From positions 1 to 10,698 of the forward strand of contig NW_021827334.1 in NCBI RefSeq assembly GCF_006345805.1: 10,698 nt of DNA, given 5' to 3'. Below, piece after piece: positions 80 to 10,409 of this stretch. Every line of letters starts with the position of its first letter. Position 1 is the stretch's first letter. Below the pieces are notes generated by a model that searched no databases, was not told the origin of the DNA, and saw only the letters and a program-made list of their open reading frames with translations. The position numbers were made by a program, and so were the translations under genes. Source of the DNA: Octopus sinensis. Taxonomy: Eukaryota.

Positions 80-1723
80 TTTCCACAAAGTGGCTAACCT
101 CGAAGGAAAATCCTCACCCCCGAGGTTGTGCAACCAGTCTGGTATGCCCGCCTCGCCACAAGAGATGCCAACATATTTGCAGAACACCTGGCCACTATCC
201 AGGAGGCCAATCCGGAAACGTCGCAAAACCGGGAGTCGGAGCCACTGCGCGCGCCCACTGTCGCCGGACCATCACCCGATCACCATTGCAGAGGTGACCT
301 GGCCATCCGTTCGTCAAAAGGCAACGCACCGGGCCATGACAAAATACCGATGCGATTGTTTAAGGAAGCACCCGAAGACCTACATGTGTTCCTCGCGGAT
401 CTGTTTACGGCAAGTCTCAAATGGGGCCATGTGCCGGAAAAATGGAAAATCTCAGAGGTCCGGATGATCAAAAGCCTGCGAAACCGGTGAATCTCGCTAG
501 CAGCTACCGTCCCATAAGCCTAATCCCAACTATCTCAAGGCTGATGGAGAAAATTATGGCCAAGCGCCTCGACTTCCACGCCGAAGAAAGAAAGTGCTGC
601 TCCCGCAGCAATGGGGTTTTCGCTCTGGACGTAGCTGCGGTGACTGTTTCATTACGGTACAGTCCACCATCTCGAGAGCAACGGAGTTTAAAGAAACTTT
701 ATCTCTTGTATGTCTGGACATCTCAAAGGCTTTTGACAGCGTCTGGCACAGAGACCTCCTGGAAGGATCGAACTCTGTGAGCCAACAGCGGAAGTCTTCC
801 TCTGGATGCGCTGCTTCCTCTCAAATCGCTACTCTTTTATCTCTGAGTCGGGCTTCTTCTCAGATATATATTTCGCTCCGAAGGGGGTTCCGCAGGGGTC
901 CTGTCTCAGTCCAATCTTTTTCAATTTGGTAATGAGCAGTTTCCCCACACCCTCCGATCCAGGACATCCCTACTCCTCTACGCGGACGATGTTCTCGTCT
1001 GGACACCTCGATGGACACCAATGCCTCGGAGAAACGACTTGCCGGCTACATTGAGGAGATAAAGAATTGGTGCATTGGTAAGCGACTCTCGCTGGCCATG
1101 GACAAATCTGCATATCTCCAAATTAACCCAAGAAAGTCGCAAGATCGCAAACCCGGCTCTTTGGTGGAAATTGCTCGCCCTGAGAGCATACGTTACCTGG
1201 GGCTCACAATCGACGCAAACTCGAGATACCATTTGCATTTCAAACGGAGAAAAGGGAAAGCCATCGCCGCTCTCCGACTCCTAAGAAGCATGCACTTGAA
1301 TCCAAATACCTTCCTATTTGTATACCATGCAACAATCTTGCCCAGCCTACTGTATGGTATGGAAGCTTGGTTCTACTCGAAACAATATGAGAAAATTCTG
1401 CGAAAATGCGAAAAAATACGGAGATACGCTCTAAAACTAGCCTATATGCTAAATCCATGGGAGCCTGTCCCAAGCTGGGCGGAGAGCAAGTCTCCAGAGC
1501 TACGGCAGGCCATCGAGCTTCTATCCGAACTTTTCGAAACGCTCTAAAGTAACTGACCTATTCATCGATCGTGGAGAATAGCAGGTGTCCCTGCTCATAG
1601 ACAGACAAAGCGGACGAACCATGGAAGAGCTCGAATGCCCAAAGCAATCGTCTCGTCAAAATTACTTTCCGCACTAATTTTCTGTCTCGCTCTTCTTTCT
1701 TACAATAAAATTCTTCGTTCGTT
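80..1723 (+). mobile_element. Element A, copy 1: 5'-truncated non-LTR retrotransposon (Jockey/I/CR1-like RT) inserted at the H2A start codon
   Basis: RT motifs, AATAAA at 1704-1709, short TTC/TTCG tail. Flanked by CAG--TATAATGT (69-79, 2-nt deletion) and CAGAGTATAATGT (1724-1736). Confidence 0.88.
90..1581 (+). pseudogene. Reverse transcriptase of element A, copy 1 (frameshifted as read; no endonuclease domain)
   Basis: Segments in different frames: KGNAPGHDKIP, SYRPISLIPTISRLMEK, QWGFRSGRS, LDISKAFDSVWH, GVPQGSCLSP, RYLGLTID, ILPSLLYGMEAW. These are canonical non-LTR RT motifs. Confidence 0.92.
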
Positions 1724-1732
1724 CAGAGTATA

Positions 1733-2107
1733 ATGTCTTCAAGAGGAAAAGGAGGAAAAGTACGGTCAAAGGCTAAAAGCAAATCCGTTCGGGCCGGGTT
1801 ACAGTTTCCAGTTGGACGCATTCACCGGTGTCTCCGTCATGAAACCCGAATGCGAGTAGGAATTCTGCCGCAGTAATATGTGCGCAGTATTGGAATATGC
1901 TGTGGCTGAAATGCTTGAACTTGCTGGAAATACAGCAGTAAAATGTGGAAAAAGAAGAATTAAACCCGTCACATTGTCGTTGCAATTGGAAATGACGACG
2001 AATTAAAGAATTAACTCAGAAAGCTATTATTTCATCTGGTGGATTTATGATTCGCAAAACTGCAGAAACTCCTAAAACAACTTCCTAACTTTAAATTAAT
2101 TATTTGA
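1733..2107 (+). CDS. H2A: Histone H2A (divergent), copy 1; several indels probably sequencing error
   Basis: Nearly identical to the open copy at 7513-7890 ([39 protein letters not shown]). Confidence 0.88.
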
Positions 2108-2201
2108 ATAATGCGCTGTTATTTTGTAATATTGTTTTCGAAATACAATAGATCAACCAGTTAAGTTTTTTTAACGAATTTCAAAATAATTTCAAACACA
2201 A

Positions 2202-3330
2202 TTAACGAATATTGTATAGGGTGGAGTTCTTGATTTTCTTTGGCCAGTTGATGCCAATAAGAATTCTTAACTGTCTTCTATGGAATGCATCAAGAGATTT
2301 TGATTCAGACTCAGATATTCCCCATGTTCCTCCGTTGTACAAAAGTATGGGTTTAATAAAAGCATTGTATAATTTGGCACGTAAGGCCGTTCCAACCTCG
2401 CGGTTTCGTAGCCAAGTGTCCGCAGTTTGTTAAGTGCAACAGTCGATAGCATCTTTCTCCTCATAATGTCTTCACTATCTCCTAAAAGAGTTCCCACTTT
2501 TTTCGAGTTTCGCCATTTTTCGTCTGTTCTATTTGCCCCCGGTTGATTGTTACATATTCGGTTTTGTCTATGTTCACTTTTAAGAACCATTTTTCCAGTG
2601 CCTGAGGAGCAATGTTCAGCGTTCTTCGAGAGTCGACTTATCATGAGACAAAAGTCTACATCGTCGGCATATATCACTTCAGTTATTGAAGTAGACTTCA
2701 CTAGTTTTCTCAGATCTCTTAGTGCCGCTTCAAGATAGACAATGAATAGTACAGGTGATATTGAATCACCTTGGGGCGTTCCAATGCTTGTTTTGAAAGA
2801 TCTTGATTGTACGGTCCGATCTTCACCGTTAACTCGGTGTCTATAAGTAGTGCTCGAACCATTCTGATCGAGTCATTGTCAAGAATAGTTTTGAGGATCT
2901 CCATTAGCTTGTCTCTGCGGATTGTATCAAATGCCCTGCTCATATCAATGCCCAATATTGTGGTCGCCATTTTAAATTTCTGAGATATGGCACAGATCCA
3001 TCTATGTCCCCATACTACATCTGCAGTTGATCGCCCAGCCTGAATCCACTTTGGCTAGCCGACAGATATTCATTAACAGGGTCCTTAATACGTTCCAGTG
3101 TTACGAGCGAGAAGATTTTCCTTATGTGTTCAAGAGTATGATTGGGCGAATGTTGTTAAGAGGACCTTGCGGCTTGTTGGTTTTTGGAGAGGAATTAGCG
3201 TTCCTTTCCCATAGGCGGTATGGTATTTCCATGGAACATCTCGTTCAGGAGATTTGTGATTATATTGAGATCTCCATGGGGAGTACTTTATCAATTCACC
3301 GTTGATGTTGTCTGGACCCGCCGCACGGTT
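2202..3330 (-). pseudogene. Reverse transcriptase of element B, copy 1 (RTE-like; frameshifted as read)
   Basis: NRAAGPDNINGELIKY, GIDMSRAFDTIRR, YADDVDF, KKVGTLLGDSEDIMRRK. Ends at TLYNIR-stop. Confidence 0.9.
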
Positions 3331-3789
3331 GGGTACTCCCGCTGTATGTGTCCTAAAAGGTCATTATCCTCGAAGTCCCGGGGGACCCCAGAGGAGCAGG
3401 ACTCTTACCTGCCTTACCTTTTGTTCAATCCTGACAAGCCGATGCATGCCAGGACCGAACGGGCTGGACTTCTCCAGCTCTCCTTTAAAGCTGAAGAAGT
3501 CCTCCTCCTTCTCCCACCCAAGCAGAATTGGGTGGGCTCCCTCTTCAGGACTCTATACAAGCTTTGAAGGCTGGATAGAGTCTAACGTACCTAAGATCTT
3601 TATGACCGAGGCCTTCCCACTTGTAGGAGGACCTCAAGTCGTGCCACAGCACCGAAGGTAATTCTGCCCCCGGCGCCAGTGGTCTTCTTTGGGTGTGCAT
3701 CCACCTGATCGGACACACACCCAGTACCTAAAACATTAGGGGGGGTTGGACGGCCAGCCGCACGTTTGGGTTTCCCCACCGTGTACCAA
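3291..3789 (-). pseudogene. ORF1/gag-like segment of element B, copy 1 (frameshifted as read)
   Basis: Counterpart of the open frame 9084-9581 in copy 2. Confidence 0.4.
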
Positions 3790-4238
3790 CCGTCCTCAAG
3801 GGCAACCTATTTCCTGCCTGCCGTACCCACCGGGACGGCCTCAGGAGACGACACCCTGTTGGCATTAATTGACTTACCCTAGGCTGGTTTGGCACCACTA
3901 GACAAACCGCAAACACGTGGCGAACCAGCATGCTGTGCGGTTGTCGTGGCTACCAACAATTAGTACCTGTTGCAGCTGCTGCTCCCCCGACACCAGCCAA
4001 GGGGGAGCAGAGGAGAAGAGTCTTCAGTGAGTGCTGAACCCATCTGGGAGGGTCCAGGCTTCGACCCCTTCCTGCTTTGACCTAAAGAATTAAAAACACC
4101 ACTAGAATAGCCGGAAGCACGTGGCGGTGAACCACGGCTCCGGCAGTTCATCGTAGTGGCACACTGAACCGTCTTGTCCTCCGGGGAGTGCGAAGCGGGA
4201 ACGCCTCCACTTCTGCATAGTCTTCTTAGTGCAGACAG
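3790..4238 (-). other. GC-rich structured leader of element B, copy 1
   Basis: Lies between H3 codon K27 and the ORF1-like segment, with no ORF conserved between copies. Hairpins at 3893-3950, 3979-4010 (perfect 10-bp stem CTGCTCCCCC/GGGGGAGCAG) and 4097-4160. Confidence 0.6.
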
Positions 4239-4322
4239 CTTGCGAGCAGATTTTGCAGACAACTGTTTCCTTGGTACTTTTGCACCAGTAGATTTTCGAG
4301 CCGTTTGTTTTGTTCTAGCCAT
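4239..4322 (-). pseudogene. H3: Histone H3 N-terminal tail fragment (Met to K27), copy 1; histone fold absent
   Basis: [28 protein letters not shown], after which homology is lost (LSA may be the last H3-derived residues). No H3 core sequence occurs anywhere in the unit. Confidence 0.93.
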
Positions 4323-4328
4323 ATTTTA

Positions 4329-4623
4329 TTATTTTTTTTTTTCAGTCTGTATTTCACGTGAGGTAATGGTAGCCTTCGAATTCTGATAGACTAAATTTGA
4401 AGCCTCGGTTTTTATTTTGTCATAAACATCGAATGTAAAACTGTCCATAGCCATCATAGCCTTCTTTGACATCCCAAGTTGATTATGTACTGTCTTTAAA
4501 ATTTTCATAAGATATATCGAAAAAGTTTTCCTTTTCTTTTTTTTTTTTCTTTGTAGCGACGGAAACATTTTTTGTTTTAATGGGAGCTCTTTTTTGTCCT
4601 TTTGTGCTAACTTTAGGTGCCAT
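4329..4623 (-). pseudogene. H2B: Histone H2B, C-terminally truncated, copy 1
   Basis: MAPKVSTKG...KRKTFSIYLMKILKTVHNQLGMSKKAMMAMDSFTFDVYDKIKTEASNLVYQNSKATITSREIQT, then an A-run and stop. The segment equivalent to AVRLLLPGELAKHAVSEG is missing. One frameshift lies in the lysine A-run. Confidence 0.9.
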
Positions 4624-4659
4624 TATTAACAAAATTTGTATGTTCCGAGGGGAAAAACA

Positions 4660-4731
4660 TTATATAATAAAAAAAGTATTATTCCAAAATTTTTTTTGAG
4701 TAATGCAAAAAAGTATCATTCCGAATTTTTT
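4660..4731 (-). promoter_or_regulatory. H2B promoter: TATA-like element plus two copies of a shared histone upstream motif
   Basis: TATATAA on the minus strand at 4660-4666, about 40 bp from the ATG. On the + strand, AAAAAAGTATTATTCCAAAATTTT and AAAAAAGTATCATTCCGAATTTT lie 37 bp apart. Confidence 0.55.
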
Positions 4732-5021
4732 GAGAGGAATAATTTGTAATAGTAGATAATTAAAATATTTCTTAATAAAATAAAACAATAAAGTAAAACG
4801 AGAAAGTTATAAATTAGTTAATGTCATGAGGAAATTATTATTATAATACATTCCGTAGGAACATTAACAAAGTTATAATCCGACACGTGTCACAAGCAAA
4901 ACAATCTTCTGTTCCTTGCTCGTCCATGCCCCTCTGTTGCGGGCGAAATCCCGCAAAGATTTTAGGTCGTCCCAGTTTTTGAAACTTTTGCCATGAAGTT
5001 TGAGATCCCTTTCAAGAACTG

Positions 5022-5116
5022 TGTGTGATGACATGGGATGAACTGGTCACCAAATACCACAAGCGGTACTTAAGACAGTTGGATGTAGATAGTCTCTACA
5101 GGCTTATATACAGTCA
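5022..5116 (+). mobile_element. Probable remnant of the C-terminus of an R4/Dong-like (restriction-like endonuclease) non-LTR retrotransposon
   Basis: CVMTWDELVTKYHKRYLRQLDVDS, then one frameshift to LQAYIQS. This resembles the recalled C-terminal motif PYVMTWDGxVTxYHxxYLxxxGxxxxIEAYIQS. It lies in a GC-richer island (~4880-5250) within AT-rich spacer. Confidence 0.5.
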
Positions 5117-5373
5117 GCCCTTTCCTGACGTTTAGTCAGCAAGAGGCGCTAGACTGCACCTTCTCGAAGGTCTACAGTGCCAGAGAAGAAAAGGAAGAAA
5201 AAGAGGAGGTTCGTGGAGTGCCACCTTCTGCTCACTTCGAAGGCTCTGGACTTAGTAAAATACTTAGTTTCTTTTTTTAATAAAGCTAGTTAGTATATTT
5301 ATGAAATTGCTAATTTTTATCTGGTAAATTTGTAAGGAATATCAATGTATTTTATTAAAAAAATTATGTATAT

Positions 5374-5685
5374 TTATCCACCAAATCCGTAAATTGTCCT
5401 ACCTTGACGTTTCAAGGCATTAACAACGTCCATTGCGATAACAGTTTTTCTTTTGGCATGCTCAGTGTAAGAAATACAATCACGAACAGTTTGCTCAATA
5501 AAAATCTTAAGGACAGAACGTGTCTCCTCGTAAATTTTTCCAGAAATTCTTCGAACACACCCCCCTCTTCGACATAGTCTTCTTATTGCTGGCTTAGTAA
5601 TTCCTTGTATATTGTCAATTAATATCTTTCGAAATCGTTTTGCACCACTCTTTCCTCCTTTGCCACCTTTACCACGTCCAGACAT
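5374..5685 (-). CDS. H4: Histone H4 (divergent, full length, 103 aa)
   Basis: [10 protein letters not shown]...[14 protein letters not shown]...[11 protein letters not shown]...[27 protein letters not shown]. An AATAAA lies shortly after the stop on the minus strand. Confidence 0.97.
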
Positions 5686-5844: not shown

Positions 5845-5857
5845 CAGAGTATAATGT
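5845..5857 (+). repeat. Left target-site duplication of element A (CAGAGTATAATGT, includes the H2A ATG)
   Basis: Exact 13-nt match to 7504-7516. Confidence 0.88.
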
Positions 5858-7503
5858 TTTCCACAAAGTGGCTAACCTCGAAGGAAAATCCTCACCCCCG
5901 AGGTTGTGCAACCAGTCTGGTATGCCCGCCTCGCCACAAGAGATGCCAAACATATTTGCAGAACACCTGGCCACTATCCAGGAGGCCAATCCGGAAACGT
6001 CGCAAAAACGGGAGTCGGAGCCACTGCCGCGCCACTGTCGCCGGACCATCACCCGATCACCATTGCAGAGGTGACCTGGGCCATCCGTTCGTCAAAAGGC
6101 AACGCACCGGGCCATGACAAAATACCGATGCGATTGTTTAAGGAAGCACCCGAAGACCTACATGTGTTCCTCGCGGATCTGTTTACGGCAAGTCTCAAAT
6201 GGGGCCATGTGCCGGAAAAATGGAAAATCTCAGAGGTCCGGATGATCAAAAGCCTGCGAAACCGGTGAATCTCGCTAGCAGCTACCGTCCCATAAGCCTA
6301 ATCCCAACTATCTCAAGGCTGATGGAGAAAATTATGGCCAAGCGCCTCGACTTCCACGCCGAAGAGAAGAAAGTGCTGCTCCCGCAGCAATGGGGTTTTC
6401 GCTCTGGACGTAGCTGCGGTGACTGTTTCATTACGGTACAGTCCACCATCTCGAGAGCAACGGAGTTTAAAGAAACTTTATCTCTTGTATGTCTGGACAT
6501 CTCAAAGGCTTTTGACAGCGTCTGGCACAGAGACCTCCTGGAAAGGATCGAACTCTGTGAGCCAACAGCGGAAGTCTTCCTCTGGATGCGCTGCTTCCCT
6601 CTCAAATCGCTACTCTTTTATCTCTGAGTCGGGCTTCTTCTCAAGATATTTCGCTCCGAAGGGGGTTCCGCAGGGGTCCTGTCTCAGTCCAATCTTTTTC
6701 AATTTGGTAATGAGCAGTTTCCCCACACCCTCCGATCCCAGGACATCCCTACTCCTCTACGCGGACGATGTTCTCGTTCTGGACACCTCGATGGACACCA
6801 ATGCCTCGGAGAAACGACTTGCCGGCTACATTGAGGAGATAAAGAATTGGTGCATTGGTAGCGACTCTCGCTGGCCATGGACAAATCTGCATATCTCCAA
6901 ATTAACCCAAGAAAGTCGCAAGATCGCAAACCCGGCTCTTTGGTGGAAATTGCTCGCCCTGAGAGCATACGTTACCTGGGGCTCACAATCGACGCAAACT
7001 CGAGATACCATTTGCATTTCAAACGGAGAAAAGGGAAAGCCATCGCCGCTCTCCGACTCCTAAGAAGCATGCACTTGAATCCAATACCTTCCTATTTGTA
7101 TACCATGCAACAATCTTGCCCAGCCTACTGTATGGTATGGAAGCTTGGTTCTACTCGAAACAATATGAGAAAATTCTGCGAAAATGCGAAAAAATACGGA
7201 GATACGCTCTAAAACTAGCCTATATGCTAAATCCATGGGAGCCTGTCCCAAGCTGGGCGGAGAGCAAGTCTCCAGAGCTACGGCAGGCCATCGAGGCTTC
7301 TATCCGAACTTTTCGGAAACGCTCTAAAGTAACTGACCTATTCATCGATCGTGGAGAATAGCAGGTGTCCCTGCTCATAGACAGACAAAGCGGACGAACC
7401 ATGGAAGAGCTCGAATGCCCAAAGCAATCGTCTCGTCAAAATTACTTTCCGCACTAATTTTCTGTCTCGCTCTTCTTTCTTACAATAAAATTCTTCGTTC
7501 GTT
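5858..7503 (+). mobile_element. Element A, copy 2: 5'-truncated non-LTR retrotransposon at the H2A start codon
   Basis: RT motifs, AATAAA at 7484-7489, TTCTTCGTTCGTT tail, exact 13-bp flanking duplication. Confidence 0.9.
5868..7361 (+). pseudogene. Reverse transcriptase of element A, copy 2 (frameshifted as read)
   Basis: SYRPISL, QQWGFRSGRS, LDISKAFDSVWH, GVPQGSCLSP, LLLYADD, RYLGLTID. Ends at DLFIDRGE-stop. Confidence 0.92.
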
Positions 7504-7516
7504 CAGAGTATAATGT
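7504..7516 (+). repeat. Right target-site duplication of element A
   Basis: CAGAGTATAATGT, whose ATG (7513) opens the H2A ORF. Confidence 0.88.
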
Positions 7517-7983: not shown

Positions 7984-9123
7984 TTAACGAATATTGTATA
8001 GGGTGGAGTTCTTGATTTTCTTTGGCCAGTTGATGCCAATAAGAATTCTTAACTGTCTTCTATGGAATGCATCAAGAGATTTTGATTCAGACTCAGATAT
8101 TCCCCATGTTCCTCCGTTGTACAAAAGTATGGGTTTAATAAAAGCATTGTATAATTTGGCACGTAAGGCCGTTCCAACCTCGCGGTTTCGTAGCCAAGTG
8201 GTCCGCAGTTTGTTAAGTGCAACAGTCGATAGCATCTTTCTCCTCATAATGTCTTCACTATCTCCTAAAAGAGTTCCAACTTTTTTCGAGTTTCGCCCTT
8301 TTTCGTCTGTTCTATTTGCCTCCCGGTTGATTGTTACATATTCGGTTTTTTCTATGTTCACTTTTAAGAACCATTTTTCCAGTGCCTGAGGAGCAATGTT
8401 CAGCAGTTCTTCGAGAGTCGACTTATCATGAGACAAAAAGTCTACATCGTCGGCATATATCACTTCAGTTATTGAAGTAGACTTCACTAGTTTTCTCAGA
8501 TCTCTTAGTGCCGCTTCAAGATAGACAATGAATAGTACAGGTGATATTGAATCACCTTGGGGCGTTCCAATGCTTGTTTTGAAAGATCTTGATTGTACGG
8601 GTCCGATCTTCACCGTTAACTCGGTGTCTATAAGTAGTGCTCGAACCATTCTGATCGAGTCATTGTCAAGAATAGTTTTTGAGGATCTCCATTAGCTTGT
8701 CTCTGCGGATTGTATCAAATGCCCTGCTCATATCAATGCCCAATATTGTGGTCGCCATTTTAAATTTCTGAGATATGGCACAGATCCATCTATGTCCCCA
8801 TACTAATCTGCAGTTGATCGCCCAGGCCTGAATCCACTTTGGCTAGCCGACAGATATTCATTAACAGGGTCCTTAATACGTTCCAGTGTTACGAGCGAGA
8901 AGATTTTCCTTATTGTGTTCAAGAGTATGATTGGGCGAATGTTGTTAAGAGGACCTTGCGGCTTGTTGGGTTTTTGGAGAGGAATTAGCGTTCCTTTCCC
9001 AATAGGCGGTATGGTATTTCCATGGAACATCTCGTTCAGGAGATTTGTGATTATAGTTGAGATCTCCATTGGGGAGTACTTTATCAATTCACCGTTGATG
9101 TTGTCTGGACCCGCCGCACGGTT
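7984..9123 (-). pseudogene. Reverse transcriptase of element B, copy 2 (RTE-like; indels as read)
   Basis: NRAAGPDNINGELIKYSP, NIRPIILLNTIRKIF, SQSGFRPGRSTAD, GTPQGDSISPVLF, YADDVDF, IKPILLYNGGTWG, AFHRRQLRILIGINWP. Confidence 0.92.
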
Positions 9124-9581
9124 GGGTACTCCCGCTGTATGTGTCCTAAAAGGTCATTATCCTCGAAGTCCCGGGGGACCCCGAGGAGCAGGACTCTTAC
9201 CTGCCTTACCTTTTGTTCAATCCTGACAAGCCGATGCATGCCAGGACCGAACGGGCTGGACTTCTCCAGCTCTCCTTTAAAGCTGAAGAAGTCCTCCTCC
9301 TTCTCCCACCCAAGCAGGAATTGGGTGGGCTCCCTCTTCAGGACTCTATACAGCTTTGAAGGCTGGATAGAGTCTAACGTACCTAAGATCTTTATGACCG
9401 AGGCCTTCCCACTTGTAGGGAGGACCTCAAGTCGTGCCACAGCACCGAAGGTAATTCTGCCCCCGGCGCCAGTGGTCTTCTTTGGGTGTGCATCCACCTG
9501 ATCGGACACACACCCAGTACCTAAAACATTAGGGGGGTTGGACGGCCAGCCGCACGTTTGGGTTTCCCCACCGTGTACCAA
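9084..9581 (-). CDS. ORF1/gag-like open frame of element B, copy 2
   Basis: Open 165-codon frame with a non-ATG start. KVRQVRVLLLGVPRDFEDNDLLGHIQREYPTVRRVQ resembles the RRM-like portion of non-LTR ORF1 proteins (pattern recognition only). Confidence 0.45.
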   Translation of the reverse strand: MVHGGETQTCGWPSNPPNVLGTGCVSDQVDAHPKKTTGAGGRITFGAVARLEVLPTSGKASVIKILGTLDSIQPSKLYRVLKREPTQFLLGWEKEEDFFSFKGELEKSSPFGPGMHRLVRIEQKVRQVRVLLLGVPRDFEDNDLLGHIQREYPTVRRVQTTSTVN

Positions 9582-10029
9582 CCGTCCTCAAGGGCAACCT
9601 TATTTCCTGCCGTACCCACCGGACGGCCTCAGGAGACGACACCCTGTTGGCATTAATTGACTTACCTAGGCTGGGTTTGGCACCACTAGACAAACCGCAA
9701 ACACGTGGCGAACCAGCATGCTGTGCGGTTGTCGTGGCTACCAAACGATCAGAACGTTGCACCTGCAGCTCCCCCGACACCAGCCATAGGGGGAGCAGAG
9801 GAAAAGTGTCTCCAGTGAGTGCTGAACCCACCTGGGAGGGTCCAGGCTTCGACTTCTCCTCCTGCTTTCGCCTAGAAAATTAAAGACACCACTAGAATAG
9901 CCGGAAGCGCGTGGCGGTGAACCACGGCTCCGGCAATTCAATCGTAGTGGCACACTGAACCGTCTTGTCCTTCTGGGAGAGCGAGGCGGGAAGCACCTCC
10001 ACTTCTGCATAGTCTTCTTGTGCAGACAG
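9582..10029 (-). other. GC-rich structured leader of element B, copy 2 (divergent variant)
   Basis: Counterpart of 3790-4238, with hairpins at 9681-9738 and 9887-9951. Confidence 0.6.
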
Positions 10030-10113
10030 CTTGCGAGCAGATTTTGCAGACAACTGTTTCCTTGGTACTTTTGCACCAGTAGATTTTCGAGCCGTTTGTT
10101 TGTTTCTAGCCAT
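10030..10113 (-). pseudogene. H3: Histone H3 N-terminal tail fragment, copy 2
   Basis: MAR(N)[24 protein letters not shown], with the same junction as copy 1. Confidence 0.92.
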
Positions 10114-10119
10114 ATTTTA

Positions 10120-10409
10120 TTATTTTTTTTTTTCAGTCTGTATTCACGTGAGGTAATGGTAGCCTTCGAATTCTGATAGACTAAATTTGAAGCCTCGGTT
10201 TTTATTTTGTCATAAACATCGAATGTAAAACTGTCCATAGCCATCATAGCCTTCTTTGACATCCCAAGTTGATTATGTACTGTCTTTAAAATTTTCATAA
10301 GATATATCGAAAAAGTTTTCCTTTTCTTTTTTTTCTTTGTAGCGACGGAAACATTTTTTGTTTTAATGGGAGCTCTTTTTTGTCCTTTTGTGCTAACTTT
10401 AGGTGCCAT
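10120..10409 (-). pseudogene. H2B: Histone H2B, C-terminally truncated, copy 2
   Basis: Open from MAPKVSTK to ATITSRE, then joined to the same A-run and H3 ATG as copy 1. Confidence 0.9.

What the first reader, a model, noticed from the sequence alone, without database searches (positions are those of the whole stretch)
3955..4235. A ~280-bp hypervariable patch in otherwise near-identical units
Seen: outside this patch the copies differ mainly by 1-nt indels with only scattered substitutions. Between 3955-4235 and 9742-10025 I count about twenty substitutions by eye, mostly transitions (e.g. GAGAAGAGTCTTC versus GAAAAGTGTCTCC; TTTGACCTAAAG versus TTTCGCCTAGAA). The patch is the 5'-most part of element B, next to the H3 junction. 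This shows the copies are distinct molecules. Inference: gene conversion or template switching with another family member, exchange of 5' ends among units, or an assembly mosaic of two haplotypes.
Basis: partly seen in the sequence, partly recalled or inferred. Interest (0 to 1): 0.7.

Follow-up and report, generated by a model that had tools for sequence, protein, structure and literature searches.

The report
Gene-conversion patch in octopus LINE copies
Two neighbouring copies of a 5.8-kb octopus histone-gene repeat differ in one 246-bp block because one copy carries a second, pre-existing version of that block, taken from a related retrotransposon copy elsewhere in the histone clusters. This is ordinary repeat shuffling, but the block lies in a retrotransposon gene that reads in frame from a histone H3 start codon.

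Summary
The window is a contig of Octopus sinensis holding about 1.85 tandem units of 5.78 kb. Of 33 substitutions between the units, 23 fall in 3958-4203 (unit 2: 9747-9995); binomial P = 7e-23.

The patch is not hypervariable. It has two discrete versions, alpha and beta, and both recur in 11 other copies from other histone-cluster contigs. Unit 2 is beta at 24 of 24 diagnostic patch sites and alpha at 27 of 27 sites downstream. It is therefore a recombinant. The most likely cause is a DNA-level gene-conversion tract of roughly 250-390 bp, or up to about 930 bp if alpha was the donor.

It does not belong to RTE-like "element B". It belongs to a separate APE-type LINE ("LINE-C") that is cut at 3331 and fused to B.

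After assembly indels are removed by consensus, the region reads as one open frame. The frame runs from the H3 start codon through the patch into LINE ORF1 (0 stops in 265 codons; 3-13 in the other frames). A sister lineage has an H2B start fused in the same frame.

The patch itself is a routine mosaic. The histone-LINE association is the more interesting by-product and is not resolved.

The parts
3958..4203 (-). Variable patch in unit 1, alpha haplotype. It covers codons about 41-122 of the frame that opens at the H3 ATG.
   Evidence: 23 of the 33 inter-unit substitutions fall here. Unit 1 is alpha at 22 of 24 diagnostic sites and differs at 3 of 243 positions from alpha copy L009_678.
9747..9995 (-). 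Variable patch in unit 2, beta haplotype. This is the converted or recombinant tract.
   Evidence: Unit 2 is beta at 24 of 24 diagnostic sites. It differs at 1-3 of about 245 positions from beta copies L015_6511, L006_8915, L004_3257 and L009_13791, but at 24 of 242 from alpha L009_678.
4239..4322 (-). Histone H3 start codon plus 28 codons, [28 protein letters not shown] (unit 2: 10030-10113). The rest of H3 is absent.
   Evidence: tblastn against O. sinensis H3.2-like P0007. Comparison with the intact H3 gene at L005 10001-10411 shows that homology ends after CGCAAG.
4204..4238 (-). Invariant 5' terminus of LINE-C, CTGTCTGCACTAAGAAGACTATGCAGAAGTGGAGG. It encodes [12 protein letters not shown], which resembles H4 residues IRRLCRRGG (unit 2: 9996-10029).
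   Evidence: The same first LINE nucleotide is joined to H3 codon 28 in 8 copies and to H2B codon 25 in 3 copies. It shares a 13-nt identity plus further matches with the window's own H4 gene at 5586-5560.
3331..4238 (-). 5' part of LINE-C: the ORF1 N-terminal extension plus the first roughly 40 codons after the MHRLVRIE methionine at 3447, cut at 3331 (unit 2: 9124-10029).
   Evidence: blastn gives 91-98% identity to 11 other copies. The full element at L009 596-5126 has a CCHC ORF1 and an ORF2 matching Exo_endo_phos and RVT_1. The frame is open: 0 stops against 3-13 in the other frames, and 0 of 20000 shuffles are open.
2209..3330 (-). RTE-like 'element B': a reverse-transcriptase fragment truncated at both ends and joined out of frame to LINE-C (unit 2: about 7991-9123).
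   Evidence: 99% protein identity to O. sinensis LOC115230848. Other genomic copies (L001-L003) match only this range and have an APE domain upstream instead of the patch region. The junction sequence is GGGAGTACCC|AACCGTGCGG.
4097..4159 (-). Imperfect 63-nt hairpin or palindrome inside the patch (CCACTACGATGAAC...TTCTAGTGGTG). It is conserved between alpha and beta. A second, related hairpin lies at 3891-3950, just past the 3' edge of the patch.
   Evidence: A direct repeat at 204-nt spacing. The RNAalifold stem spans columns 83-144 and all its pairs are invariant. In this stretch the only alpha/beta changes are synonymous (codons 59, 68 and 76).
84..1724 (+). 'Element A': a 5'-truncated LINE related to LINE-C, inserted at the H2A start codon. 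The target-site duplication CAGAGTATAATGT(C/T)TTC lies at 5845-5861 and 1724-1740.
   Evidence: RVT_1 match. The empty site is seen at L004 12723-12803 and 12739, where unit positions 4-83 abut 1724-2211 with a 17-nt overlap.
1733..2108 (+). Divergent histone H2A gene. Its frame is broken by assembly indels in unit 1; the unit 2 copy starts at 7513.
   Evidence: tblastn; 98% identity to the 119-aa H2A annotated in the loci.
4340..4623 (-). Histone H2B, truncated after ...TSREIQT and joined directly to the H3 leader.
   Evidence: Pfam Histone match, tblastn, junction sequence ACAGACTGAAAAAAA. The full H2B at L009 5169-5516 continues as AVRLILPGE.
5374..5685 (-). Divergent histone H4 gene, 103 aa, intact.
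   Evidence: ORF listing, Pfam, tblastn with 79% identity to canonical H4.

Best explanation
The window holds about 1.85 tandem 5.78-kb units of a degenerate variant-histone repeat of Octopus sinensis.

Each unit contains a dead fragment of an APE-type LINE, which I call LINE-C. The 5' end of this LINE is joined to the first 28 codons of histone H3. LINE-C copies in the histone clusters exist as mosaics of a few old sequence modules. The 246-bp patch is one such module and comes in two versions, alpha and beta, that differ by about 10%.

The two tandem units were duplicated as DNA, because they share three unique dead junctions. Afterwards one of them exchanged this module with a non-allelic LINE-C copy of the other type. 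The exchange was homologous recombination or gene conversion, with a tract of at least 246 bp.

The result is a clean block of 23 substitutions in otherwise identical units.

Shown here: the block, the two haplotypes, the donor-type copies, and the recombinant pattern.
Inferred: that the exchange was a DNA-level conversion, and in which direction it went.
For: Block: 23 of 33 substitutions fall in 246 of 4912 bp, P = 7e-23.

Two haplotypes only, in 13 aligned copies:
- alpha: W_u1, L009_678, L009_19405, and the gamma copies L008, L010 and L013.
- beta: W_u2, L004, L006, L009_13791, and three copies in L015.

Recombinant pattern: of the 52 alpha/beta diagnostic sites from the patch to the C/B junction, W_u2 is beta at 24 of 24 in the patch and alpha at 27 of 27 downstream. 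W_u1 is alpha at 22 of 24 and at 27 of 27.

Pairwise distances:
- W_u2 against beta copies: 1-3 of about 245 in the patch, but 24-27 of about 197 in the 3' block.
- W_u2 against alpha L009_678: 24 of 242 in the patch, but 0 of 620 downstream.

Mosaic ancestry rather than local selection: synonymous divergence between alpha and beta varies widely along the element. It is 0.141 in the patch, 0.009 in the central part, 0.294 in block 2 and 0.041 in the ORF1 core.

All four haplotype combinations exist, both for H3-tail with patch and for patch with the 3' block.

DNA-level duplication of the units: both share the C/B junction at 3331/9124, the truncated H2B/H3 junction, and the element-A insertion with its TSD.
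Against: No sequencing reads could be examined, so the physical linkage of the beta patch to the alpha backbone rests on a single low-accuracy contig (about 1.5% indel discordance between units).

Only two units are seen, so the direction of conversion and the state of the rest of the array are unknown.

Only 13 copies were sampled, all from contigs fetched through histone genes. The true donor was not identified.

A double crossover or unequal sister-chromatid exchange would give the same pattern as gene conversion.
Confidence: 0.75

Rival explanations
1. Assembly or consensus artefact. The contig consensus for unit 2 was built or polished partly from reads of beta-type LINE-C copies located elsewhere, which created a mosaic that does not exist in the genome.
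For: The contig is short (10.7 kb) and unplaced, and it carries many residual 1-nt indels (74 indel positions in 4.9 kb). Beta copies with the same H3 tail exist elsewhere and could be mis-recruited.
Against: The switch is a clean block: 24 of 24 beta sites, then 27 of 27 alpha sites, with no interleaving. True beta loci differ by about 13% in the 3' block (24-27 of about 197 positions) and lack the C/B junction only 630 bp away, so long reads from them would not align across unit 2. Unit 1 has identical flanks and was not affected.
Confidence: 0.12
2. The two units are not recent DNA duplicates that later diverged. Instead the array was assembled from two already different H3::LINE-C copies (1/alpha/alpha and 1/beta/alpha) that were produced earlier by RNA-level template switching between co-packaged LINE RNAs during retrotransposition.
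For: Mosaic LINE lineages are widespread in this family. The alpha, beta and gamma lineages swap relationships between segments. This is what reverse-transcriptase template switching produces in other LINEs (established for L1; my own knowledge).
Against: Both units share the same non-functional, out-of-frame C/B junction, the same truncated H2B/H3 junction, and the same 5'-truncated element A with the same TSD. Such a unit cannot have retrotransposed, so it was duplicated as DNA after these events. The patch difference therefore arose later, or by DNA exchange.
Confidence: 0.06
3. In-situ hypermutation or diversifying selection acting on this stretch. Examples would be a diversity-generating retroelement mechanism or positive selection on the encoded peptide.
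For: The patch lies in an open reading frame, and 13 of the 22 alpha/beta codon changes are nonsynonymous. Reverse transcriptases are encoded nearby.
Against: There are only two haplotypes, and both pre-exist unchanged in other contigs. Synonymous divergence is as elevated as nonsynonymous divergence: pS 0.141, pN/pS 0.53, which is no different from the out-of-frame control frames. The substituted bases are evenly A, T and G, with no adenine specificity. The reverse transcriptases are LINE-type.
Confidence: 0.03

Closest known systems
Non-allelic (ectopic) gene conversion and concerted evolution among tandem and dispersed repeats, such as histone and rDNA arrays, and Alu and L1 gene conversion in primates
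   Same: A short tract of a few hundred bp is copied from a diverged paralogue into an otherwise identical repeat. The tract has sharp boundaries, donor-type copies exist elsewhere, and four-gamete patterns appear among the copies.
   Different: Here the converted sequence is a dead LINE fragment embedded in a variant-histone repeat of a cephalopod. The donor, the direction and the frequency of the exchange are unknown. The comparison with the primate cases rests on my own knowledge, not on a test made here.
Mosaic LINE-1 lineages and 5'-end replacement in mammals (mouse A/Tf/Gf families with monomeric promoters; primate L1 5' UTR turnover)
   Same: The 5' module of the element evolves as an exchangeable block. 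Lineages alpha, beta, gamma and delta share most of ORF1 and ORF2 but carry different 5' modules. Mouse L1 promoters are built from monomeric units (PMC10620060).
   Different: The exchanged module here is coding, not a UTR. It has no true tandem monomers, only a 30-nt core repeated at 204-nt spacing with 83% identity. The element is not an L1.
Rapidly evolving N-terminal and coiled-coil region of L1 ORF1p
   Same: The N-terminal part of ORF1 is far less constrained than the core. Frame-0 pN/pS is about 0.5 in the patch and central part, against 0.12-0.32 in the core.
   Different: There is no evidence of positive selection here. The excess divergence is also present at synonymous sites.
LINEs that live in multicopy host genes and depend on host transcription (R1/R2 in rDNA, SLACS/CRE in spliced-leader genes, Utopia/Keno in snRNA genes: PMC4640811, PMC5035012)
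   Same: LINE-C copies are joined at one fixed nucleotide to the 5' part of multicopy genes (H3, H2B), in the gene's orientation. A diverged relative is preceded by an 18S/ITS1 fragment.
   Different: The 3' flank is not the remainder of the same target gene. It is the leader of another complete histone gene. The endonuclease is APE-type with no shown sequence specificity. In one full-text search no listed paper described histone genes as a target of target-specific non-LTR elements.
L1 chimeric retrocopies made by RT template switching (U6-L1 type), and 5'/3' transduction
   Same: The junctions fall at apparent mRNA 5' ends. Extra G residues occur at several junctions. Different LINE tails are joined at the same leader position.
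   Different: This was not demonstrated. At least one junction, element A at the H2A start, is an ordinary insertion with a 17-bp target-site duplication and an empty site elsewhere.

Membership tests
Gene-conversion / recombinant mosaic tract | Differences are clustered in one block, with identity on both sides | tested here: met
   23 of 33 substitutions fall in 246 bp, P = 7e-23. There are 0 substitutions in 3331-3957 and 2 adjacent ones (4311-4312, inside the H3 tail and probably one misaligned indel) in 4204-4340.
Gene-conversion / recombinant mosaic tract | A donor-type sequence with the same haplotype exists elsewhere in the genome | tested here: met
   Six beta copies in L004, L006, L009 and L015 differ from unit 2's patch at 1-3 of about 245 positions.
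Gene-conversion / recombinant mosaic tract | The recipient keeps its own lineage markers outside the tract | tested here: met
   Unit 2 is alpha at 27 of 27 downstream diagnostic sites. True beta copies differ there at 24-27 of about 197 positions.
Gene-conversion / recombinant mosaic tract | The mosaic is present on single DNA molecules (read support) | not testable with these tools
   No read data are available. Only the one contig of GCA_006345805.1 carries this unit type (the cluster of P0025 is on 1 contig).
APE-type two-ORF LINE (identity of the element that holds the patch) | ORF2 with an apurinic-like endonuclease and a reverse transcriptase; a gag-like ORF1 | tested here: met
   ORF2 at L009 2342-5020 matches RVT_1 at 1.6e-37, Exo_endo_phos_2 at 7e-9 and Exo_endo_phos at 5e-7. 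ORF1 has three CCHC knuckles visible in its translation. The window region 3331-4238 is 98% identical to L009 678-1582.
   L001-L003 match only window 2209-3331. Upstream of that point, L003 carries an AT-rich APE domain instead.
Diversity-generating retroelement variable region | Adenine-specific substitutions relative to a template repeat, with a DGR-type RT nearby | tested here: not met
   The substituted bases are A 7, T 7, G 7 and C 2. The RTs are LINE-type. Only two haplotypes exist.
Monomeric LINE promoter array (mouse L1 type) | Two or more tandem monomers of about 200 bp with clear similarity over their whole length | tested here: not met
   Only a 30-nt core recurs at 204-nt spacing, with 83% identity. 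The rest aligns weakly (local score 61). The region is also an open reading frame.
Self-cleaving ribozyme at a LINE 5' junction (HDV-like, as in R2) or any Rfam family | A match to a curated covariance model | tested here: not met
   cmscan of the whole window at E <= 1 gave 0 matches. RNAalifold on the patch found 2 compensatory pairs among 88 and a covariation term of -1.06.
Target-specific LINE of a multicopy gene (R1/R2-like) | The same insertion site in independent copies, with both flanks derived from one target gene | tested here: inconclusive
   The 5' flank is always H3 codon 28 or H2B codon 25, joined at the same LINE nucleotide. The 3' flank is the leader of a different complete histone gene, not the remainder of the interrupted one. 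Sampling was biased towards histone loci.

The most novel reading that the evidence does not exclude
LINE-C may be a retrotransposon lineage that has become integrated with the octopus variant-histone clusters in two ways.

1. Its ORF1 protein may be translated from a histone start codon. It would then carry a complete H3 N-terminal tail (28 aa) or an H2B tail (25 aa), followed by an H4-like LRRLCRSGG segment. This could be histone-tail mimicry, or use of the tail for nuclear import or chromatin targeting.

2. Its 3' end, and the 3' ends of two related LINEs, sit at fixed positions 7-64 nt upstream of H2A, H2B, H3 and H4 start codons. This suggests either histone-leader-specific integration or LINE-mediated copying of histone genes, by template switching from capped histone mRNAs or by transduction.

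On this reading the patch would be the fast-evolving, exchangeable N-terminal module of that fusion protein.
Probability: 0.3. Interest if true: 0.8.

Novelty: new member of a known kind. Interest (0 to 1): 0.42.

Why it matters
The patch itself is a textbook signature of non-allelic gene conversion between repeat copies. It matters mainly as a caution: it is neither a hypermutation system nor a sequencing error. It also shows that short conversion tracts shuffle old sequence modules among LINE copies in cephalopod histone clusters.

Following the patch outwards gave a less ordinary result. After correction of assembly indels, the sequence around the patch is an open reading frame that runs from a histone H3 start codon (H2B in a sister lineage) straight into a LINE ORF1. 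In addition, LINE 3' ends abut the leaders of all four core-histone gene types.

If that association is functional, it would be a new niche for a LINE. It would also be a way for histone gene families to be copied and rearranged. This can be tested directly with long reads, Iso-seq and proteomics in octopus.

Tried and rejected
- **Rfam scan of the whole window at E <= 1:** no match, so there is no ribozyme, snRNA or tRNA-like element. ARAGORN found no tRNA or SINE head.
- **SINE or high-copy dispersed repeat:** the 900-bp region has no match in 58 kb of unrelated O. sinensis loci.
- **The patch as a remnant of H3 or H4 coding sequence:** tblastn shows that only the first 28-40 H3 residues match, plus a 9-11-residue H4-like stretch.
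- **The 120-aa ORF (H3 tail plus patch) as a conserved protein:** only the H3 tail finds homologues among 5.8 billion proteins.
- **The 165-aa ORF downstream:** one spurious TPR hit among 1.84 billion representatives.
- **The 403-aa H2B::ORF1 fusion from L010:** only the overlapping start of ORF2 finds a relative.
- **Exact-pattern scans** of metagenome and viral contigs for a conserved 24-mer next to the patch: no hits.
- **Conserved RNA structure in the patch:** 2 compensatory pairs among 88, covariation term -1.06, so not supported.
- **Diversifying selection:** pN/pS is 0.53 in frame, the same as the out-of-frame controls.
- **Exact-sequence look-up of the window's H4:** not on record.
- **Literature search for histone-targeting non-LTR elements:** no listed paper described one. 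The cephalopod epigenetics paper did not treat histone gene clusters.

Full report
**1. What the window is**

The window is a direct tandem repeat with a period of about 5.78 kb.

A stop-free reverse-transcriptase piece (7987-8649, minus strand) is 99% identical to Octopus sinensis LOC115230848. The only contig that carries the identical piece is 10,698 bp long, which is the window itself. All related loci fetched later come from assembly GCA_006345805.1.

The two units differ at 74 indel positions, almost all of 1 nt. This is the signature of residual long-read consensus error in a repeat.

**2. The observation**

A global alignment of the units gives 33 substitutions. Twenty-three of them lie in 3958-4203 (unit 2: 9747-9995). 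That is 9.3% divergence against 0.2% elsewhere, with binomial P = 7e-23.

Sixteen of the 23 are transitions. The true block ends at 4203, not at 4235.

**3. Anatomy of the unit**

Read on the minus strand, one unit contains the following, in order:
- An intact divergent H4 gene (5685-5374).
- A spacer containing an RTE 3' fragment.
- H2B, truncated after ...REIQT (4623-4340).
- The H3 leader, the ATG and 28 codons (4322-4239).
- A GC-rich stretch of 908 bp (4238-3331).
- An RTE-like RT fragment, "element B" (3330-2209).

On the plus strand lie H2A (from 1733) and a 5'-truncated LINE, "element A" (84-1724).

Element A is an ordinary insertion. An empty site exists in L004, where unit positions 4-83 abut 1724-2211 with a 17-nt overlap. 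That overlap is the target-site duplication CAGAGTATAATGT(C/T)TTC, which spans the H2A start codon.

**4. The patch is not part of element B**

Three other genomic copies of element B match only window 2209-3331. Upstream of that point L003 has an AT-rich APE domain.

The 908-bp stretch recurs at 91-98% identity in 11 other places in histone-cluster contigs. In L009 it continues into a complete element at 596-5126. That element has a 315-aa ORF1 with three CCHC knuckles and an 893-aa ORF2 that matches Exo_endo_phos, Exo_endo_phos_2 and RVT_1. I call it LINE-C.

In the window, LINE-C is cut at 3331 and joined out of frame to element B (GGGAGTACCC|AACCGTGCGG). This junction was not seen in any other locus.

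**5. Two haplotypes and a recombinant**

I aligned 13 copies. The patch shows two discrete versions:
- Alpha: unit 1, two L009 copies, and the three "gamma" copies in L008, L010 and L013.
- Beta: unit 2, L004, L006, L009_13791, and three copies in L015.

There are 57 sites that separate alpha from beta. Five of them lie in the H3 tail, where both units carry the "type 1" state that I scored as beta. At the other 52 sites:
- Unit 2 is beta at 24 of 24 patch sites (one further site falls in a gap) and alpha at all 27 sites downstream.
- Unit 1 is alpha at 22 of 24 patch sites (one further site falls in a gap) and alpha at 27 of 27 downstream.

Pairwise distances agree:
- Unit 2's patch differs from beta copies at 1-3 of about 245 positions, and from alpha at 24 of 242.
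- Downstream, unit 2 is 0 of 620 from alpha, but 24-27 of about 197 from beta in the 3' block.

Unit 2 is therefore an alpha backbone that carries a beta patch. Equivalently, unit 1 is a "type 1 H3 tail / beta / alpha" unit whose patch was overwritten by alpha.

The visible switch points lie between 4263 and 4203, and between 3958 and 3950. A beta-to-alpha conversion would need a tract of 246 to about 385 bp. An alpha-to-beta conversion would need 246 to about 930 bp.

**6. Why this is DNA-level exchange**

Both units share three dead junctions: C/B, the truncated H2B/H3 junction, and element A with its TSD. The 5.78-kb unit therefore spread as DNA and cannot have retrotransposed. The patch difference must post-date that duplication, or else reflect exchange at the DNA level.

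Mosaicism is general in the family:
- All four combinations of H3-tail type with patch type exist, and all four combinations of patch type with 3'-block type exist.
- Alpha and beta are 98-100% identical along most of the element, except in two blocks of about 89% identity. These are the patch and a second block around the ORF1 methionine.
- In the patch, beta is the odd one out (alpha equals gamma). In block 2, alpha is the odd one out (beta equals gamma).
- Synonymous divergence between alpha and beta is 0.141 in the patch, 0.009 in the centre, 0.294 in block 2 and 0.041 in the ORF1 core.

Uneven synonymous divergence points to different ancestry of the segments. It does not point to local selection or hypermutation.

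**7. The patch lies in an open reading frame**

Individual copies show stops at scattered, different places, as expected from indel errors.

A majority consensus of four beta copies reads open from the H3 ATG through the whole 908-bp stretch and on into ORF1. That is at least 633 codons.

The 795 nt between H3 codon 28 and the MHRLVRIE methionine have 0 stops in this frame. The other five frames have 3-13 stops. None of 20,000 shuffles is open.

The gamma copy in L010 is open by itself for 403 codons. It starts at an H2B ATG plus 25 codons, joined to the same LINE nucleotide (CTGTCTGCAC) and in the same frame.

Coding constraint in this frame varies along the element:
- It is clear in the ORF1 core (pN/pS 0.12-0.32) and in block 2 (0.14-0.22). 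The other frames give about 1-2 there.
- It is weak in the central part (0.49-0.60).
- It is absent in the patch (0.53, like the control frames).
- Within the patch, codons 49-78 ([30 protein letters not shown]) show 3 synonymous changes and no replacement.
- Codons 29-40 ([12 protein letters not shown], similar to H4 IRRLCRRGG) show 3-4 synonymous changes and no replacement between gamma and alpha/beta.

A diverged (86.5%) delta copy in L017 is not near any histone gene. It shares ORF1 only from ...EDGWHTVGKPKR... onward (window 3808). It has its own N-terminus (MVVFPVMRKNDNLK...). It is preceded by a 5'-truncated 18S rRNA 3' part and an ITS1-like stretch.

The part of ORF1 that holds the patch is therefore a lineage-specific 5' module.

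Whether translation really starts at the histone ATG is not shown. Two in-frame fusions have a chance probability of about 1/9, and a native start at the methionine of codon 57 is possible.

No homologue of the N-terminal extension was found in three protein searches.

**8. Other tests**

- Rfam gave no match, and ARAGORN found nothing.
- A 63-nt imperfect hairpin in the patch (4097-4159) and a related one at 3891-3950 share a 30-nt core at 204-nt spacing. The second hairpin lies at the 3' switch point.
- Covariation support for an RNA structure is negligible: 2 compensatory pairs among 88.

**9. Verdict**

The patch is real and far beyond chance. Its most likely cause is non-allelic gene conversion, or an equivalent recombination, between two old versions of the 5' module of a LINE embedded in a variant-histone tandem repeat (confidence 0.75).

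The main rival is an assembly mosaic (0.12), and only reads can exclude it.

As a phenomenon this is a new instance of a well-known process.

The by-products are unusual, and I could not resolve them here. They are histone-start::ORF1 fusions in two lineages, and LINE tails at fixed positions in front of all four histone gene types (13 of 49 gene starts for LINE-C alone).

Noticed in passing
L004, L005, L008, L009, L015 (e.g. L009 4700-5168; L004 7429-7566; L008 1308-1760); window 1640-1740: The last roughly 430 nt of LINE-C (...CTTAACTAATAAATTTTTCC(C)n) end 14-64 nt upstream of the ATG at 13 of 49 histone gene starts: H4 5 of 12, H3 4 of 20, H2B 3 of 9, H2A 1 of 8. The tails of element A ((TTCG)n) and of the delta lineage join at the same leader positions: H3 -16, H4 -20, H2B about -23, H2A -9. 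Extra GG is often present at the junction. Three explanations remain open: site-preferential integration, template switching from capped histone mRNAs, or transduction.
   Followed up: partly
L009 596-2414; L010 981-2189; window 3331-4322 (minus strand): After consensus correction, the H3 start codon plus 28 codons (an H2B start plus 25 codons in the gamma copies) are in frame with at least 290 further stop-free codons that lead into LINE ORF1. Both histone fusions use the same LINE nucleotide, and the first 12 LINE codons resemble H4 residues 46-54.
   Followed up: partly
L017 7801-8700: A diverged LINE-C relative lies outside the histone clusters. It is preceded by a 5'-truncated 18S rRNA 3' part (Rfam SSU model positions 1117-1823) and about 170 nt of ITS1-like sequence, directly upstream of its own ORF1 start codon.
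   Followed up: partly
window 84-1724, with 1724-1740 and 5845-5861: Element A is a 5'-truncated LINE inserted at the H2A start codon with a 17-bp target-site duplication. The uninterrupted site is present in L004, L009 and L011.
   Followed up: yes
window 4336-4350 (unit 2: 10127-10141): H2B is truncated after ...TSREIQT and joined through a CTG microhomology and an A-run to the first nucleotides of the H3 leader. This is the same leader boundary at which other contexts begin.
   Followed up: partly
window 1733-2108, 4340-4623, 5374-5685; loci L004-L016: The histones of these clusters are unusually divergent. H4 is 79% identical to canonical H4. The H3 carries ...SVSQFGGVKKPHRFRPGVVAM..., and H2A has an atypical C-terminus. 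The genes are AT-rich, whereas the embedded LINEs are GC-rich. They are probably a variant (possibly stage- or germline-specific) histone set rather than the canonical replication-dependent genes.
   Followed up: no
window 4097-4159 and 3891-3950 (minus strand): Two related imperfect hairpins lie 204 nt apart. Each contains a CACGTG E-box-like core, which is changed to CACGCG in the beta version of the first hairpin. Differences between the two hairpins look compensatory (CCGGA/TCCGG against CCGCA/TGCGG). The second hairpin coincides with the 3' recombination switch point.
   Followed up: partly
window 4873-5034 (minus strand); L009 329-589: The spacer between H4 and H2B contains the C-terminal end of another RTE-like ORF (...FKNWDDLKSLRDFARNRGAW...). 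The spacers of the histone repeat are therefore built largely from retroelement debris.
   Followed up: no
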